In this document: piece by piece, positions 220 through 21,091 of the stretch
Layout: each line of letters opens with the position of its first letter
How positions within the stretch are numbered: position 1 is the stretch's first letter
Sequence record: NC_016163.1
Strand: one strand, 5' to 3'
Length of the DNA: 64,000 nucleotides
Notes under the pieces: generated by a model
What the model was told of the DNA's origin: nothing
What the model saw: the letters and a program-made list of their open reading frames with translations, nothing else
Database searches by the model: none
Program-made: the position numbers and the translations under genes

Positions 220-1296
220 ATGCAACCTATTGAGGGTATTGACAAAGCTATTAAAGATCTTACCAGTCTAACTAAGTCATATCAACATCTACCAGTATCG
301 AATAATATACAAGTAGAAATTGCGAATCTTTTCAAACTTCGTGATCTTGTTAACTATAATTGTAGTCAGTTTCCAAGTCAAACTGAACTAGCTGCAATTT
401 ATCGTCGTATATCTGGTAATGTTACGTTTGAAAAGGCAGTTAATAAAGGTCGTAGAAATGTTAGTAATTTCAATCTACGATTTGCAACCACGAATAAACA
501 TAAGCTGAAAGAATTTCTAGAGTATGTAGAATCTGATCAGACTTATCAATGTATGTCTGCTTTCTTCAATGTAAGTGACAAAGTACTTGAAGAACTAGAC
601 GTACCAGAGACAGAAACTTCGTTTACTTATAATGCATTATTAAAATCTAATAAGTATTCTGAAAAGTATCTTGATTCTCTAATCATGTCTGAGGATTCAG
701 GCTTGATTGTACCTATTCTTGGATGTAACGTTCCAGGAGTAATTTCGGCTCGTTATGGTTTTCAAAATGAAGGCTTAGAACTGGCTGAAAACTTCCGTAA
801 GTATTATATTACAGAAACTACTATGACATCTAGTCAAAAGGAAGAATGTAATCGTTTACTAGATAACCGAGATATTCGAAATTGTGTAGTTATTCTATGT
901 TCCATTGTAGAAAAAGCTCAAAACGATTTAGAAAATAATTATCCAGCTATCCTTACTACAACTGCAGCTTTGTCATATCATGGAAAAGAAATCCGCAATG
1001 CAACTGGTACCTTAAATGGTATTATTAGTACTAGACTAATTAAGAGTCTTTTTAGTAATAGTATTGGCGTTAAAGATTTTCTATTAGCGCTTCGTGGTTT
1101 TGGTTACAATCCGATTTTCCAAATTTCGGAATCTTATATGCCTTATGATGACCACGGGGTATTATTCTCTGTAGCATCAACAGTAAGATTAGAAGATACG
1201 AAAGGTTATTTCAACCATCGTAGAAATGCATTTAACGCAGTTTTATTAAGTCTTATCAGTTCTGTAGTTTTACCTTCCAGCGAATTCGAAAGCTGA
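220..1296 (+). CDS. Hypothetical protein, 358 aa
   Basis: Long ORF behind an early-type motif; no recognisable domain. Confidence 0.85.
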   Translation: MQPIEGIDKAIKDLTSLTKSYQHLPVSNNIQVEIANLFKLRDLVNYNCSQFPSQTELAAIYRRISGNVTFEKAVNKGRRNVSNFNLRFATTNKHKLKEFLEYVESDQTYQCMSAFFNVSDKVLEELDVPETETSFTYNALLKSNKYSEKYLDSLIMSEDSGLIVPILGCNVPGVISARYGFQNEGLELAENFRKYYITETTMTSSQKEECNRLLDNRDIRNCVVILCSIVEKAQNDLENNYPAILTTTAALSYHGKEIRNATGTLNGIISTRLIKSLFSNSIGVKDFLLALRGFGYNPIFQISESYMPYDDHGVLFSVASTVRLEDTKGYFNHRRNAFNAVLLSLISSVVLPSSEFES

Positions 1297-1408
1297 AGGT
1301 AATCTATAGGGTTTATAAAAGATCTTCACCACATAACAGGTTTATGTGAGACTAGGATACCGACATCCTAAAAACCTACTTATTGAAAATTTAAAGCATA
1401 AATTGCTG

Positions 1409-1425
1409 ATATATTATTTTAGTGA
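1409..1425 (+). promoter_or_regulatory. Putative early promoter ATATATTAT-tttag-TGA
   Basis: Exact family motif upstream of the 1492 gene. Confidence 0.7.
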
Positions 1426-1491
1426 GTAGGATGACGTATTTGTCAATCACTTTATCATTTCAAACAAATCTCTAAACAAGGAATACTTATC

Positions 1492-2535
1492 ATGGCTAAA
1501 AAACCTGGCTTTCTGGACAAACTGAAAAAAGGCAAAACCGCTTCTAAAGAAGAAGAAACTCTGAAAAAGGGTAAAGCTGCTGTAGAAGACGATGAAGAGG
1601 AAGAAGAAGAGGAGGAAGAAGTTGCTCCTAAGAAATCTTCTAAAAAGCCTGTCCTGAAAAAAGGTAAGAAACCTGTCGTCGAAGAAGAAGAAGACGATGA
1701 GGAAGAAGAGGAAGATGATGCTGAAGAAGAAACCGAAGACGATGAGTCTGAGGAAGAATCTGATGATGAAGAGGAAGAAGAAGAAGAGGAGGAAGTAGCT
1801 CCTAAGAAATCTTCTAAGAAATCTCTTCCTGTTAAGAAAGGTAAAAAAGCTCCTGTCGTTGAAGACGACGAGGAAGAAGAAGAGGAAGACTCCGAAGAGG
1901 AGGAAGAAGATGATGAAGAGGAGGAAGTAGCTCCTAAGAAATCTTCTAAGAAAGTAGCTCCTAAAAAAGCTGCTGCTCCTGCTAAGAAAGCCGCTAAGAA
2001 ATCTAAAGCTTCCGATGATGAAGAGGAAGATGAAGAAGAATCTAACGGTGGTAAACCTCTCTTCGGCGGTAAAGCTAAGAAAGCTGCAACTCTGCGTACT
2101 CCGAAAGAAGGCGCAACAATGCCGCGTGAAAATATCATTTCCATGATCGCTGAAAAGCTGGATTGCACTAAAGCTGAAGCAAAAACTGCTCTGGTTGGTA
2201 TTGAAGAAGTCCTGAAAGAAGTTGGTGAACAATACTCCTTCCGCTTCATGGATTCCAACTTCCGTCGTCGTGTAGTTAATACTCGCGATTACAAAGGTGC
2301 AGGTGGTCTGACTGAACGTGTATCTAGCGATGTTGCTGCTATGACTACTCGTGTCGAATCCCACGTTTCCCTGAAAGGCGAAGTAACTTACGATCGTCGT
2401 ACCATTCGTGGTGTTGGCGAAGGTGATGACTTCCGTGAAGGTAACATGGTTAATGGTAAATTCGTAGCTGGTACCTGGGATGAAGAAGGTAACTTCACTC
2501 CATCTGAAAAGAAAGTCAAAAAAGCTAAAAAATAA
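1492..2535 (+). CDS. HU/IHF-like DNA-binding protein with ~200-aa acidic/basic disordered N-terminus
   Basis: AAGGA RBS; host-optimal codons; alternating E/D runs and APKKSSKK blocks, then MPRENIISMIAEKLDCTKAEAKTALVGIEEVLKE resembling HU helices 1-2. Confidence 0.7.
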   Translation: MAKKPGFLDKLKKGKTASKEEETLKKGKAAVEDDEEEEEEEEEVAPKKSSKKPVLKKGKKPVVEEEEDDEEEEEDDAEEETEDDESEEESDDEEEEEEEEEVAPKKSSKKSLPVKKGKKAPVVEDDEEEEEEDSEEEEEDDEEEEVAPKKSSKKVAPKKAAAPAKKAAKKSKASDDEEEDEEESNGGKPLFGGKAKKAATLRTPKEGATMPRENIISMIAEKLDCTKAEAKTALVGIEEVLKEVGEQYSFRFMDSNFRRRVVNTRDYKGAGGLTERVSSDVAAMTTRVESHVSLKGEVTYDRRTIRGVGEGDDFREGNMVNGKFVAGTWDEEGNFTPSEKKVKKAKK

Positions 2536-2633
2536 TATTGACTAATAGTTAATATTAGATAAAGATTCCCCATAACGTTTAAAAGCGTTATGGGGATCCT
2601 TCAATATTATTTTTATATAAGAGGCTAAGAGAA

Positions 2634-4445
2634 TTGGAAACTATAGATCTCAACTTCGTCAATAATAAGAATCCAGAAGAAGTTTTTGAAATCACTGACG
2701 GATTGATTGAAATCTTCCGTGATGATTGGCATAGAGCCTTTGAACAAGTAAAGATTAAAATTAAAAAAGAAACTAAGGTTATCAACCTTAACTCACTGTT
2801 CACTGGTCTTATCTATTCAACTACAAGATTCCCTTTAGATAGAGAACTGACAGTTGATGATTTAGTACTGGACTTAACATCTGGTGTAAATGAAAATATT
2901 GCTAACTATTTAGATGATACTATCTTAGAATTCACTAAGCAAGATGGTGATATTTCAGAGCTGTCATTATTCATTAGTAAGGCACTTTCCAGAGCAGCTA
3001 GTTATAGTTGGAATATTAACCACTTCCGTGGTAATACTATTAATATTTATGATCTCATTAAACTCATGCAAGAGAATCCTGATCTGCGTAAGATCATTAA
3101 CTTTGAGAGCAATGAGAATCTACAGTTCGCTGAAATTGAGTCAAGCGTAGAAGAGCAAACTAAAAAACTTGTAAAAATTCTACGTTCCAAAGAAGTTGAC
3201 TCATGTTTTAAAAATATCATTCCATCTGTATCTATCAAGCAGTTCCAACAGGTATTTGTCAATATTTCTCTTAAGCCAGACTTGTATGGTATCATTATTA
3301 GTAAACCAATTAATACAAGTTTCTTTAGAGGTATGCGTAATAGTACTGATTACTATATCAACGCTCAAGGTGCCCGTAAAGCGCTTGTAACTAACGCAAC
3401 AAGTGTTAGGTCTGCTGGTTATCTTGCTCGTAAGCTCATTCTTCTTTGTCTTGGTACTCAACTCGATAGAGAAGTGGAAGATTGCGGAACTAATAATCTC
3501 ATTGAACTTAAACTTGATAATAAAGATCAAGCTAAACGTTTTACAAATAGTTTCTATAAGCTTAAACCTAGTGATAAGAAATTGTCATTGGTTACTAATA
3601 AAAACTACATGGATATTGTAGGTAAAACAGTACACTTCCGCTCTCCAATTACATGTAAATTAGGGGATGGTAAAATCTGTAAAACCTGCTATGGACATTT
3701 GTCTCATACTAATAATTTCCATATTGGCATTTCAGCTATACTGGTTCTATGTAATCAACTTATTCAACGTCTACTGTCGTCTAAACACCTATTACAAGTC
3801 TCAACTGAAAAGATTGAACTTGATGAGACAATTAGCAAATACTTCTATGTAGATAAAGATATCTTAGTTGCAAAAGAGACTTTCAAATTGTCTCTTACTG
3901 AGGTAACTGAAGCTCATAACGCTAAGCAAGTTCATGGAATTAAAATTGTAGATGAGTCTGATGAGATATTAGATTATCAGTTCTTGGATATGGAAGTATT
4001 CGATTCTATCATTTCTGAGAATTTAGATAAAGACAATTCTATAGATGTTGAACCAAATCAGCCTATTTTCAAATTTAACGTTGAGAATACTGAGATTTCT
4101 GCTCCACTTAAAAAGCTATTATCTTTGATCGAATCTGAGGTAGAGCTTAACAAACGTTCTTCAGTTAATGAATTACTTAAAGATTTAATTGATCTCTTGA
4201 ACTTATCAGGTATTCGTTTATCTGCTACAGGTCTTCAGATTCTAGTTAAATCACTGGCTAGAGATCCTTCCAATATTATGGAAAGAACTACTGATTTGAA
4301 TGATGTATACTTCCTACGTGTTCATAATGCCATTCTTAACAGTAAATCATTGTCTATCGGTTTAGCATACGAACGTTTAAAACTTCAATTAGAATCGAAT
4401 ATCTTTGATAAGACAGAGTCTTCTGTCTTGGATGTACTTTTCTAA
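2634..4445 (+). CDS. Multisubunit RNA polymerase beta-prime C-terminal subunit (probably non-virion RNAP)
   Basis: Bridge helix YYINAQGARKAL...SAGYLARKL, EDCGT, Zn site RSPITC..KICKTCYG, trigger-loop region NQLIQRLLSSKH. Confidence 0.9.
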   Translation: METIDLNFVNNKNPEEVFEITDGLIEIFRDDWHRAFEQVKIKIKKETKVINLNSLFTGLIYSTTRFPLDRELTVDDLVLDLTSGVNENIANYLDDTILEFTKQDGDISELSLFISKALSRAASYSWNINHFRGNTINIYDLIKLMQENPDLRKIINFESNENLQFAEIESSVEEQTKKLVKILRSKEVDSCFKNIIPSVSIKQFQQVFVNISLKPDLYGIIISKPINTSFFRGMRNSTDYYINAQGARKALVTNATSVRSAGYLARKLILLCLGTQLDREVEDCGTNNLIELKLDNKDQAKRFTNSFYKLKPSDKKLSLVTNKNYMDIVGKTVHFRSPITCKLGDGKICKTCYGHLSHTNNFHIGISAILVLCNQLIQRLLSSKHLLQVSTEKIELDETISKYFYVDKDILVAKETFKLSLTEVTEAHNAKQVHGIKIVDESDEILDYQFLDMEVFDSIISENLDKDNSIDVEPNQPIFKFNVENTEISAPLKKLLSLIESEVELNKRSSVNELLKDLIDLLNLSGIRLSATGLQILVKSLARDPSNIMERTTDLNDVYFLRVHNAILNSKSLSIGLAYERLKLQLESNIFDKTESSVLDVLF

Positions 4446-4466: not shown

Positions 4467-4982
4467 ATGTCTAGTAATAACGAGTACGATATCGTAAAAA
4501 AGATGTTTGATCACGCTATTGTTGAAGCTAATGCGTCTCCAGATACTCGACAGAAAGTAGGTGCTGTTATTGCAACTGGTGATCTAAGTAATATTATCTC
4601 TACGGGGTGGAATGGTCGCCCCGTTGTAGATAAAGATTTCAATAAATGTGTGAATCCTAAAACATCATCATCTTTCCCACAACTGATTCATGCAGAAGAA
4701 CGTGCTATTATTAAAGCAGGTTTTGATAAGTGTAATGGCGCTACTATTTTTGTAACACATTGCCCTTGTTTAAGATGTGCTGCCAGAATTATTGAATCTG
4801 GTATTAAGCGTGTTTACTTCATGAAAGAACACGATGAACTGGAAGGAGCTGAATATCTTCTAGCCAACGGCATTGAAGTTAGTCAAGTACCTTTCTTAAG
4901 ACGAACTATTTCTCCCAACGATCAATTCTTAAGCGAATTGGTTCCTGGAGAAGTAAAGAGTTTAAAAGAAACTGGTAAGTAA
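4467..4982 (+). CDS. dCMP deaminase
   Basis: KVGAVI, TGWNG, HAEE and PCLRC zinc-deaminase motifs. Confidence 0.92.
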   Translation: MSSNNEYDIVKKMFDHAIVEANASPDTRQKVGAVIATGDLSNIISTGWNGRPVVDKDFNKCVNPKTSSSFPQLIHAEERAIIKAGFDKCNGATIFVTHCPCLRCAARIIESGIKRVYFMKEHDELEGAEYLLANGIEVSQVPFLRRTISPNDQFLSELVPGEVKSLKETGK

Positions 4983-19242: not shown

Positions 19243-19875
19243 ATGAAAGATTTAACTAACGAACTGCTTACTGGCGGTAATCTGCTGGCTGAGTCAGTTG
19301 ATCAGGTTGAAACCAATGTGGCTATTCAAGAAGAATTGCAGAACATGGCTAACCCTACTGCACTGCTGGCTGAAAGCATGGAAGACATGCTTTTTAGCGA
19401 AGATGCTCGTATTGATGGTAATAACATTGAAATGCCATCTGATGCAGGTATTGATTCACTTCAATTCTTCAATCAGGATAACGTAGGTCAAAGCGTAGCT
19501 GATTCTACCCTGACTGGTCTTGATCCTGATCGTCAAAATGATTTCGGTAATGCTGCATTTGCCTCGTCTAACCCTAAAGGTAAAGATATGGTTCAACTGC
19601 GTAGCGTTGGTGACAACGTAGCATTAGGTGAATCCGGTATTCCTTCTCTGTTCACCGAAGGTGGTGATGAAGAATGTGATGATACCGAAACTAAAGATAT
19701 TGCTAATGGCGTAGACGACCAAACTAATAGTATTGGTGATGATGCTGGCGATTCTCTGGAAGAAAGTCTGAAACTTTTTAAAGAAGATGATGACAACGAT
19801 GATTCTGAATCCGATGTCGAAGAAGACGATGAAGATGAGGATGACGACGAGTACGAAGATGAGTTAGGTCTGTAA
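19243..19875 (+). CDS. Acidic late protein, probable internal head/scaffold protein
   Basis: Late motif at 19205; repeated L-x-E-S motifs (LLAES twice, ALGES, SLEES). Confidence 0.65.
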   Translation: MKDLTNELLTGGNLLAESVDQVETNVAIQEELQNMANPTALLAESMEDMLFSEDARIDGNNIEMPSDAGIDSLQFFNQDNVGQSVADSTLTGLDPDRQNDFGNAAFASSNPKGKDMVQLRSVGDNVALGESGIPSLFTEGGDEECDDTETKDIANGVDDQTNSIGDDAGDSLEESLKLFKEDDDNDDSESDVEEDDEDEDDDEYEDELGL

Positions 19876-20728: not shown

Positions 20729-21091
20729 ATGGCAACTGTAAATGATCTGCTGGCTCAAGTACAAACTAACCTGAAAGCTCAAGGCGTAGACTCTACTAAG
20801 AAAGAGTGTGGCGTTGCTCTGGAAGCCGTTCTGAATGCAATTCAGACTGTAGCTCTGGATCAGGGTTCTATCCGTACTGCAATCGGTACGTTTAAACGTA
20901 AAGAATGCGCAGCTCGTCAGGCACATAACCCTAAAACTGGTGATAAAGTTGATGTTCCAGCTAAAATCACCGTTAGCTTCAAATCCTATTACAATGAAGT
21001 AGTAGGCGAGAAAAAAGCTGCTAAGAAAGCCGCTCCAGCGAAAGCTGCAGCTCCGGCTGCTAAAAAAGTAGTTAAAAAAGGTAAAAAATAA
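20729..21091 (+). CDS. HU-family DNA-binding protein with Lys/Ala/Pro tail
   Basis: IGTFKRKECAARQAHNPKTGDKVDVPAKITVSFK arm motif; tail KKAAKKAAPAKAAAPAAKK; late motif at 20627. Confidence 0.9.
   Translation: MATVNDLLAQVQTNLKAQGVDSTKKECGVALEAVLNAIQTVALDQGSIRTAIGTFKRKECAARQAHNPKTGDKVDVPAKITVSFKSYYNEVVGEKKAAKKAAPAKAAAPAAKKVVKKGKK

What the first reader, a model, noticed from the sequence alone, without database searches (positions are those of the whole stretch)
1492..2535. HU-like domain fused to a 200-residue charge-block disordered region (nucleolin/histone-chaperone-like)
Seen: three EEEEEVAPKKSSKK-type units with long D/E runs alternating with K-rich blocks, then a segment resembling HU helices and arms, with strong RBS and codon bias. 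Known: blocky charge patterns drive condensates and nucleic-acid chaperoning in nucleolin and nucleoplasmin. Inference: an abundant early nucleoid-organising or replication-compartment protein, unusual for a phage.
Basis: partly seen in the sequence, partly recalled or inferred. Interest (0 to 1): 0.65.

Follow-up and report, generated by a model that had tools for sequence, protein, structure and literature searches.

The report
Divergent HU protein with charge-block tail
Gene g101 of the giant Yersinia phage phiR1-37 encodes a very highly expressed protein that joins a long, unstructured tail of alternating acidic and basic blocks to a diverged copy of the bacterial DNA-packaging protein HU, and the same design is kept in the other giant uracil-DNA phages that lack a protein 'nucleus', so it is probably their own DNA-organising protein.

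Summary
Window 1492-2535 is g101 of Yersinia jumbo phage phiR1-37.

- **N-terminal half (residues 1-200):** 80 D/E and 41 K, net charge -39. It holds three exact VAPKKSSKK units, its charge segregation is 16 sd above shuffles, and AlphaFold predicts it disordered.
- **HU/IHF fold (residues about 209-305):** the model has pLDDT 87. All six PDB representatives with Z >= 5, out of 48,161, are HU/IHF-type. hhalign against HU gives 78% probability.
- **How it departs from HU:** it scores below the Pfam cut-off, the intercalating proline is replaced by a conserved G-x-G-G-L arm tip, and a beta-hairpin extension stands in place of helix 3.
- **Expression:** published RNA-seq classes g101 as LATE. It is the 7th most abundant of 367 phage genes late in infection, about 27 times the capsid gene in read count, and it is listed as a virion protein.
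- **Relatives:** 22 metagenomic cluster representatives (two more hits are fragments) keep the same architecture, and the contexts I examined keep the synteny. Distant homologues exist in Bacillus phages AR9/PBS1/BpSp and Staphylococcus phage S6. All of these are RNA-polymerase-encoding jumbo phages; published work reports uracil DNA for phiR1-37 and AR9, presumes it for S6, and finds no chimallin in phiR1-37 and PBS1.

'Early' is not supported for phiR1-37, and the nucleolin likeness is compositional only. The most likely role is an abundant phage chromatin protein that is partly packaged. DNA binding, dimerisation and condensation are untested. The scan had noted acidic/basic disordered proteins in other jumbo phages, but not this HU fusion.

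The parts
1405..1429 (+). Phage promoter annotated in AJ972879.2; its core GATATATTATTTTA matches the A/U-rich phage promoter consensus and the AR9 early-promoter core
1478..1482 (+). Shine-Dalgarno AAGGA, 9 nt before the ATG
1492..2535 (+). g101 CDS, 347 aa (CCE26125.1), annotated 'phage structural protein'
1492..1536 (+). Conserved basic N-terminal motif (family consensus M-A-L-K-x-L-K-K-K; a short helix at residues 7-14 is predicted at low confidence); also present in AR9 g200
1537..2055 (+). Charge-block disordered region, residues 16-188: four D/E blocks alternating with K-rich blocks; pLDDT below 50 and no secondary structure
1616..1641 (+). Repeat unit 1 (26 nt, encodes EEVAPKKSS), 92% identical to the reference copy
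1790..1815 (+). Repeat unit 2 (reference copy)
1922..1947 (+). Repeat unit 3 (100% identical to the reference copy)
2059..2067 (+). L-F-G motif, residues 190-192 (F191 nearly invariant in the family), just before the folded domain; function unknown
2116..2406 (+). HU/IHF (DNABII)-fold domain, residues about 209-305: two helices followed by a beta-sheet with extended arms
2296..2343 (+). Arm tip, residues 269-284. The conserved G-x-G-G-L replaces the R-N-P-x-T-G of HU; the tip is about 10 residues longer than in HU and has lower model confidence
2407..2502 (+). C-terminal beta-hairpin extension, residues 306-337 (G-x-F-V-x-G repeats), in place of HU helix 3
2503..2532 (+). Lys-rich C-terminal tail (SEKKVKKAKK), similar in kind to the tail of the phage's canonical HU g131
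2567..2596 (+). Stem-loop annotated as a Rho-independent terminator; together with the promoter it makes g101 a single-gene transcription unit
20729..21091 (+). g131, the phage's canonical HU (PF00216, 46 bits) with an AKKA-rich tail; also a virion protein. It is a comparator and a possible partner

Best explanation
g101 is a phage-encoded, highly diverged member of the HU/IHF (DNABII) fold class.

Proposed mechanism (all of this paragraph is inferred):
- The C-terminal domain, by analogy with HU, dimerises through its two helices.
- It grips DNA with two long basic beta-arms. The arm tip is remodelled: G-x-G-G-L takes the place of the intercalating proline.
- Each subunit carries about 190 residues of disordered chain with alternating Lys-rich and D/E-rich blocks. 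The Lys blocks add non-specific DNA contacts. The acidic blocks can pair with Lys blocks of neighbouring molecules, or fold back on the protein's own DNA-binding surface. Either would tune affinity and link coated DNA segments.

The protein is made in rising, very large amounts through infection, in step with phage replication genes, and some of it ends up in virions together with the canonical HU g131.

Shown here or in published data: the architecture, the predicted fold, family conservation and synteny, expression level and timing, and virion detection.

Inferred only: dimerisation, DNA binding, any preference for uracil DNA, and the role of the disordered region.
For: **Fold**
- The AlphaFold2 model built on 21 sequences has pLDDT 87.
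- About 50 of the top Foldseek PDB hits are HU/IHF, covering about 90 of 90-99 residues (TM 0.58-0.68).
- VIA gives Z 7.4 with 86 of 91 residues aligned.
- In the Foldseek-independent scan of 48,161 chains, only six reach Z >= 5, and all six are HU/IHF-type. The next hit has Z 4.6 over 42 residues.

**Sequence**
- hhalign of the family against an HU alignment gives 78.5% probability, E 1.7e-5, aligning G-x-F-K-R...R with the HU arm base.
- PF00216 scores E 0.036. The PDB profile hit to SPO1 TF1 has E 0.058.
- Basic arm residues are kept: FKR, and the nearly invariant R265.

**Abundance and timing**
- Mean reads are 2,930, 21,421 and 62,946 in the early, middle and late phases. That ranks 7th of 367 genes late, leads the LATE class by 3.7-fold, and is 27 times the capsid gene g135.
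- Most replication genes share the LATE class.
- Codon optimisation is the highest in the window.
- g101 has its own promoter and terminator.

**Virion**
- g101 and the canonical HU g131 are both annotated as structural proteins.

**Conservation**
- The representative search gave 24 hits at E <= 0.001. After setting aside two fragments, 22 cluster representatives remain, and the 20 I aligned share the architecture.
- The synteny Ham1 - g101-like - RNAP beta' - dCMP deaminase holds on three diverged contigs, one of 249 kb.
- Distant homologues are AR9 g200 (hhalign 86%; BFVD E 6.7e-6), BpSp gp258 and S6_0320 (68%).
- AR9 g200 is also among the most abundant transcripts at 5, 20 and 40 min.
Against: - No experiment shows DNA binding or dimerisation, and the homodimer prediction could not be run.
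- The protein fails the Pfam HU threshold (12.4 vs 22.4 bits). It lacks the intercalating proline and helix 3. The structural Z of about 7 is middling in absolute terms.
- The net charge of the whole protein is -36, which is odd for a DNA-coating protein and would oppose packaging next to DNA.
- The AR9 and BpSp homologues are not flagged as virion proteins, and AR9's disordered region is not blocky (z = 1). So neither virion residence nor charge blocks are universal in the wider family.
- Virion detection by sensitive mass spectrometry could reflect carry-over of a very abundant protein.
- RNA abundance is not protein abundance.
Confidence: 0.55

Rival explanations
1. g101 is primarily a packaged internal head or ejection protein. 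It is loaded into the prohead, possibly through the conserved N-terminal M-A-L-K-x-L-K-K motif, and perhaps trimmed by the T4 gp21-type prohead protease g079. It then travels with the DNA into the cell, where it shields the incoming uracil DNA from host uracil-DNA glycosylase, nucleases or restriction before phage genes are expressed.
For: - g101 is annotated as a virion structural protein and expressed late.
- The phage encodes a Peptidase_U9 prohead protease.
- The N-terminal motif is conserved even in AR9.
- No PF18880 Ugi is detectable in phiR1-37, so another means of protecting uracil DNA is needed.
- In BpSp the homologue sits next to Ugi.
Against: - Read count is 27 times that of the capsid gene, far more than a minor internal protein should need.
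- The AR9 homologue is transcribed from an early promoter at 5 min and is not listed among AR9 virion proteins.
- A chain with net charge -36 is an unlikely passenger in a DNA-filled head.
- No processing data were available to me.
Confidence: 0.2
2. g101 is a decoy or dominant-negative factor. The long D/E blocks would mimic DNA and soak up host DNA-binding proteins such as HU, H-NS, restriction enzymes or uracil-DNA glycosylase. Alternatively, the HU-fold domain would heterodimerise with host HU and poison it, decompacting or silencing the host nucleoid.
For: - The charge is extremely acidic, in long runs.
- An HU-type dimerisation body is predicted.
- From my own knowledge, not checked here: acidic DNA mimics such as Ocr and Ugi, and the SPO1 HU inhibitor Gp46, show that phages use such strategies.
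Against: - The basic arm residues are conserved, and Lys-rich blocks and tails are retained. Both argue for nucleic-acid contact rather than pure mimicry.
- Host-takeover factors are usually early and transient, whereas g101 rises 21-fold to a late peak.
- No interaction data exist.
Confidence: 0.1
3. [quoted passage not shown]
For: - The published label appears in Table S2.
- From my own knowledge: bacterial HU can bind RNA.
- The canonical arm tip is lost.
Against: - No RRM or PABP domain was found in Pfam, PHROGs or NCBIfam.
- The label is best explained by low-complexity matches, like the bias-driven nucleophosmin and RanGAP1 hits.
- In the wide PDB scan every match with Z >= 5 carries a DNA-binding name or solved complex: five HU/IHF-type proteins and one 'putative DNA binding protein'.
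Confidence: 0.07

Closest known systems
Bacterial and phage HU/IHF (DNABII, Pfam PF00216), including the phage's own g131 and SPO1 TF1
   Same: Predicted body of two helices plus a beta-sheet with extended arms, matched over about 90 residues. The G-x-F-K-R...R arm base aligns. Expression is high. TF1 likewise serves a phage with a replaced thymine (own knowledge).
   Different: g101 scores below the Pfam cut-off. G-x-G-G-L replaces N-P-x-T-G, so there is no intercalating proline. The arm tip is about 10 residues longer. Helix 3 is replaced by a beta-hairpin extension. A 190-residue net-acidic disordered region precedes the domain.
African swine fever virus pA104R
   Same: A viral HU-fold protein that the retrieved paper's title links to genome packaging. 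It is among the top structural matches (Foldseek rank 1; VIA Z 6.7). From my own knowledge it is late-expressed and found in the virion nucleoid.
   Different: pA104R is a compact protein of about 100 residues with no charge-block region, and it belongs to a eukaryotic virus.
HU proteins with Lys/Ala-rich extensions (mycobacterial HupB, Deinococcus HU; own knowledge) and g131 of this phage
   Same: An HU domain joined to a low-complexity, H1-like AKK-rich segment. g101 has such blocks at residues 146-172 and at its C-terminus.
   Different: Those extensions are uniformly basic. In g101 they alternate with long D/E runs and the net charge is strongly negative.
Nucleolin / nucleophosmin / nucleoplasmin and the HMGB1 acidic tail
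   Same: Long D/E tracts alternate with basic tracts beside a nucleic-acid-binding module. The family profile hits the acidic region of nucleophosmin (E 6.5e-7, but with 19 bits of compositional bias).
   Different: No homology: there is no nucleoplasmin core, RRM, GAR or HMG box. The likeness is one of composition and possibly of physical behaviour only.
AR9 g200 / PBS1 gene 90 / BpSp gp258 / Staphylococcus phage S6_0320 (all annotated hypothetical)
   Same: Distant homologues with the same order of parts. All have an E/K-rich disordered region followed by an HU-like domain. AR9 g200 also shares the MALKKK-type N-terminus, the beta extension and the Lys tail; S6_0320 starts differently and carries about 110 extra N-terminal residues. 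The AR9 gene is also among its phage's most abundant transcripts.
   Different: AR9's disordered region is mixed rather than blocky (z = 1). The AR9 gene has an early plus a late promoter and is not listed as a virion protein. The synteny with Ham1 and RNAP beta' is absent.

Membership tests
HU/IHF (DNABII, PF00216) | Sequence match to the family HMM above the curated threshold | tested here: not met
   PF00216 scores 12.4 bits (E 0.036) against a cut-off of 22.4, and only over model positions 1-34. There is no Pfam hit at default settings.
HU/IHF (DNABII, PF00216) | Profile-profile homology to bona fide HU proteins | tested here: inconclusive
   hhalign of A1 against A2 gives 78.5% probability, E 1.7e-5, over 63 columns that end at the arm base.
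HU/IHF (DNABII, PF00216) | Fold: helix-turn-helix body plus a three-stranded sheet with two-stranded protruding arm | tested here: met
   Predicted model only. pLDDT is 87. Foldseek's top hits (about 50) are all HU/IHF. VIA gives Z 7.4 over 86 of 91 residues. All six representatives with Z >= 5 out of 48,161 are HU/IHF-type.
HU/IHF (DNABII, PF00216) | Arm-tip motif R-N-P-x-T-G with the DNA-intercalating proline | tested here: not met
   The family consensus is R-x-Y-x-G-x-G-G-L. The proline-equivalent position is variable (A270 in g101), whereas the HU alignment A2 keeps N and P invariant.
HU/IHF (DNABII, PF00216) | Conserved basic residues along the arms | tested here: met
   F-K/R-R lies at the arm base and R265 is nearly invariant. 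K/R residues are present on the return strand.
HU/IHF (DNABII, PF00216) | C-terminal helix 3 packing on the body | tested here: not met
   The model shows beta strands at 307-337 and no helix after the arm.
HU/IHF (DNABII, PF00216) | Obligate dimer | not testable with these tools
HU/IHF (DNABII, PF00216) | Binds and bends double-stranded DNA | not testable with these tools
   This needs gel-shift, structural or in vivo data.
Nucleoplasmin/nucleophosmin or nucleolin histone chaperones | Nucleoplasmin pentameric core, or RRM plus GAR domains | tested here: not met
   No such domains were found in Pfam. The PDB hit to nucleophosmin lies in its acidic linker with 19.4 bits of bias.
Phage virion (internal) protein | Detected in purified particles | not tested
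   This is taken from the GenBank note and the published Table S2. The primary proteomics paper was not readable here.

The most novel reading that the evidence does not exclude
In the chimallin-less, uracil-DNA, RNA-polymerase-encoding jumbo phages (phiR1-37-like, AR9/PBS1-like, S6-like), this charge-patterned HU-fold protein would be the organiser of a membrane-less phage 'chromatin'. HU arms would anchor it on uracil DNA. Alternating acidic and basic blocks would drive multivalent self-association into a condensate. That condensate would segregate and shield phage DNA from host uracil-DNA glycosylase and nucleases, and a fraction would be delivered with the genome in the virion. This would make it a functional counterpart of the protein nucleus of Chimalliviridae.
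Probability: 0.15. Interest if true: 0.85.

Novelty: new variant of a known kind. Interest (0 to 1): 0.6.

Why it matters
Jumbo phages that encode their own multisubunit RNA polymerases but lack chimallin (phiR1-37, PBS1/AR9, the Staphylococcus jumbo phages) have no known way of organising or shielding their replicating genomes. Two points from this work bear on that:

- One of the most abundant phiR1-37 transcripts encodes an unrecognised HU-fold protein with a nucleolin-like charge-block tail.
- The design is kept across the three cultured lineages of this clade and in the metagenomic relatives examined.

Together these give a concrete candidate for the clade's DNA-organising factor and a simple set of experiments to test it.

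The work also corrects the published labels for g101 ('polyadenylate-binding protein; RNA-binding', or 'hypothetical'). It adds a structurally distinct branch to the DNABII fold class: a proline-less, glycine-rich extended arm and a beta extension instead of helix 3.

Tried and rejected
**Searches that gave nothing significant**
- Pfam, PHROGs and NCBIfam scans of the full protein and of the C-domain. The only relevant trace was phrog_379 'DNA binding protein' at E 0.034.
- phmmer of the C-domain against PDB sequences.
- The word-index protein search found only a fragment of g101 itself.
- tblastn of g101 and of two metagenomic homologues against 50,697 phage records found only phiR1-37.

**Hits set aside as spurious**
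- The A1 profile hit on AR9 g231 lies in the low-complexity part of the profile and was discarded.
- P0006 (1243 aa, repetitive) and P0015 (a repeat protein matching only the G-x-F-x-x-G-T-W hairpin) were judged spurious and left out of the alignments.
- Two further hits were also left out: P0002, a fragment of g101 itself, and P0011, a fragment of P0004.

**Weak leads**
- The ESM Atlas gave HU-family clusters at a score of only 0.83, a lead and no more.

**Steps I could not run or complete**
- The primary phiR1-37 proteome paper and the AR9 genome paper are not held. Virion status therefore rests on the GenBank notes and on Table S2.

**Distribution test with limited power**
- The A1 profile found no match in phiKZ, Goslar or Staphylococcus phage Machias. 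The positive control BpSp reached only E 2e-4 in the same search, so this absence is weak.

**Ideas considered but left unresolved**
- Possible prohead-protease sites in the disordered region: the region is so Glu-rich that x-x-E motifs carry no information.

Full report
**Identity of the window.** The window is bases 62001-126000 of Yersinia phage phiR1-37 (AJ972879.2, 262 kb), matched at 100% identity. The flagged ORF 1492-2535 is g101 (CCE26125.1). Upstream is g100, a Ham1-type NTP pyrophosphatase. Downstream are g102, an RNA polymerase beta' subunit (phrog_3015, E 8e-115), and g103, a dCMP deaminase. g101 has its own annotated promoter (window 1405-1429), an AAGGA ribosome-binding site and a terminator stem-loop (2567-2596), so it forms a single-gene unit.

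- The 347-aa product has VAPKKSSKK at residues 44, 102 and 146, each behind a D/E run.
- Residues 1-200 hold 80 acidic and 41 basic residues (net -39). Charge segregation is 16 sd above shuffles.
- The DNA shows that the region arose by internal duplication: 26-nt units are 92-100% identical and 110-nt units 62-77% identical.
- A full-length AlphaFold2 model on a 21-sequence alignment gives pLDDT below 50 and no secondary structure over most of residues 17-186.
- Codon usage is the most host-optimised of 63 ORFs in the window: Fop 0.75 against a median of 0.41. Leu is CTG in 10 of 12 codons and Arg is always CGT or CGC.
- The RBS is ordinary.

**Is the C-terminal part HU-like?** Direct family scans fail. 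Several independent lines nevertheless converge on HU/IHF.
- PF00216 touches residues 210-243 at E 0.036 in a whole-genome scan. The same scan finds the phage's true HU, g131, at 46 bits.
- An exhaustive phmmer search found 24 hits at E <= 0.001. After removing two spurious repeat proteins and two fragments, I aligned 20 of them with g101 (A1).
- The model built on A1 has pLDDT 87. It shows helices at domain residues 12-23 and 27-47, then strands with a protruding arm whose tip (69-84) is less confident, then four further strands.
- Foldseek against the PDB returns HU, IHF, Hbb and ASFV pA104R as about 50 of its top hits, covering the whole target chains (TM 0.58-0.68, best E 1.8e-3).
- VIA gives Z 7.4 with 86 of 91 residues aligned.
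- In the Foldseek-independent scan of 48,161 representatives, only six chains reach Z >= 5 and all six are HU/IHF-type. The next match has Z 4.6 over just the two helices.
- hhalign of A1 against an alignment of true HUs (A2) gives 78.5% probability, E 1.7e-5. It aligns the helices and the G-x-F-K-R...R arm base.

I conclude that the domain (residues about 209-305) has the DNABII fold and is probably a very diverged homologue.

It is not a canonical member. It falls below the Pfam cut-off. The invariant N-P of HU, which includes the intercalating proline, is replaced by a family-conserved G-x-G-G-L in a tip that is about 10 residues longer. Helix 3 is replaced by a beta-hairpin extension with G-x-F-V-x-G repeats.

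**Expression and location (published data).** Table S2 of Leskinen et al. 2016 (PMC4848604) lists g101 as a 'virion structural protein' in class LATE. Mean gene reads are 2,930 (2-5 min), 21,421 (10-21 min) and 62,946 (28-49 min).
- I read the whole table. g101 ranks 7th of 367 genes late in infection, after g304, g326, g144, g305, g332 and g283.
- It leads the LATE class by 3.7-fold and shows a 21-fold rise.
- It has 27 times the reads of the major capsid gene g135 and 95 times those of the canonical HU g131.
- In this data set most replication genes are also LATE, whereas most virion genes are constitutive. g101 therefore tracks DNA synthesis rather than particle assembly.
[quoted passage not shown] My own profile likewise hits the acidic linkers of nucleophosmin and RanGAP1 with heavy compositional bias.

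**A conserved family.**
- All 20 aligned relatives share the same order of parts: a basic N-terminus (consensus M-A-L-K-x-L-K-K-K); a disordered region of 90-217 residues with segregated charge blocks (z 5-15; net charge +9 to -42, mostly negative); an L-F-G motif; the HU-like domain; usually the beta extension; and often a Lys tail.
- Three diverged members sit in the same gene order, Ham1 - g101-like - RNAP beta' - dCMP deaminase. One lies on a 249-kb contig.
- Among 50,697 cultured phage records, BLAST finds only phiR1-37. Structure search of viral models, however, picks out AR9 g200 (E 6.7e-6, 145 columns) and BpSp gp258.
- AR9 g200 begins MALKKK, has an E/K-rich linker, an HU-like domain and a KKK tail. 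It aligns to the family profile at 86% probability.
- Staphylococcus phage S6_0320 aligns at 68%.
- By RNAP beta' similarity these phages are phiR1-37's nearest cultured relatives.
- phiR1-37, PBS1 and PALS_2 are the published examples of phages with multisubunit RNA polymerases but no chimallin (PMC10299810).
- The papers I read report deoxyuridine or uracil DNA for phiR1-37 and AR9, and presume it for the S6 group.
- AR9 g200 has both an early and a late mapped promoter. Its FPKM is 1,250, 5,708 and 8,701 at 5, 20 and 40 min, above the capsid gene at every time point. It is not flagged as a virion protein.
- With the same profile I found no match in phiKZ, Goslar or Machias. The sensitivity of that test was poor.

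**Interpretation.** The most economical reading is an abundant phage chromatin protein. An HU-type dimer would hold DNA with long basic arms, and each subunit would carry a polyampholyte chain. The Lys blocks resemble the H1-like tails of some HUs, including g131. The acidic blocks could pair with Lys blocks in trans, giving networking or condensation, or in cis, giving auto-inhibition as in HMGB1. Virion detection of both g101 and g131 fits co-packaging of DNA-bound protein. It could also reflect carry-over.

I hold this reading at about 0.55. Dimerisation, DNA binding and any preference for uracil DNA are untested, and the net charge of -36 sits awkwardly with a DNA-coating role.

The rivals are listed separately with their tests: a dedicated internal or ejected protein that protects incoming uracil DNA, a DNA-mimic or dominant-negative HU decoy, and an RNA-binding or purely structural role. 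The condensate idea is kept as the novel case, at about 0.15.

'Early' is wrong for phiR1-37, although the AR9 homologue is made early as well as late. 'Nucleolin-like' is analogy only.

**Novelty.** This is a new variant of a known kind: a DNABII-fold protein with a remodelled arm, a beta extension and a conserved net-acidic charge-block region. It is confined so far to one clade of jumbo phages, and I found no published description in the literature I could search.

Noticed in passing
window 20729-21091 (+), g131: The phage also encodes a canonical HU (PF00216, 46 bits) with an Ala/Lys-rich, H1-like tail ending in KKGKK. It too is annotated as a virion protein and has strong codon bias (Fop 0.72), but its read count is about 95 times lower than g101's late in infection. 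In AR9 the situation is reversed: the canonical HU g103 has the highest 40-min FPKM (52,105) in the part of the published table I read (g001-g141).
   Followed up: partly
window 19243-19875 (+), g129: Another virion protein with a long poly-D/E C-terminal tail and no basic blocks. Its published label 'RAN GTPase-activating protein 1' looks like a compositional artefact.
   Followed up: no
window 1405-1429 and AR9 record KU878088.1 near 164214-164233: The promoter core upstream of g101 (GATATATTATTTTA) is nearly the same as the mapped AR9 early-promoter core (AAATATATATTAT) upstream of the AR9 homologue g200. This suggests shared promoter recognition by the virion RNA polymerases of the two lineages.
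   Followed up: partly
L017:4788-5830 (BpSp gp258-gp259); AR9 record KU878088.1 82226-83092: The uracil-DNA glycosylase inhibitor Ugi (PF18880) lies directly after the g101-like gene in BpSp. In AR9 it lies beside the canonical HU. No PF18880 match exists in phiR1-37, so how this phage protects its uracil DNA from host glycosylase is open.
   Followed up: partly
phiR1-37 g079 (outside the window; published Table S2): The phage has a T4 gp21-type prohead protease (Peptidase_U9). Whether it trims the Glu-rich region of g101 is unknown; in T4, acidic internal peptides arise in this way (own knowledge).
   Followed up: no
window 220-1296, 2634-4445 and 4467-4982; loci L012, L015, L016: The gene order Ham1-like pyrophosphatase, g101-like, RNAP beta' and dCMP deaminase is conserved on metagenomic contigs whose g101 homologues are only 32-38% identical to g101. 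This is a stable module linking nucleotide-pool control, transcription and the HU-like protein.
   Followed up: partly
g101 residues 1-15 and 190-192 (window 1492-1536 and 2059-2067): Two short motifs are conserved across the family outside the folded domain: the basic N-terminus M-A-L-K-x-L-K-K-K (also in AR9 g200) and L-F-G about 17 residues before the HU-like domain. Their roles are unexplained; they could be a targeting signal, a docking peptide or a cleavage site.
   Followed up: no
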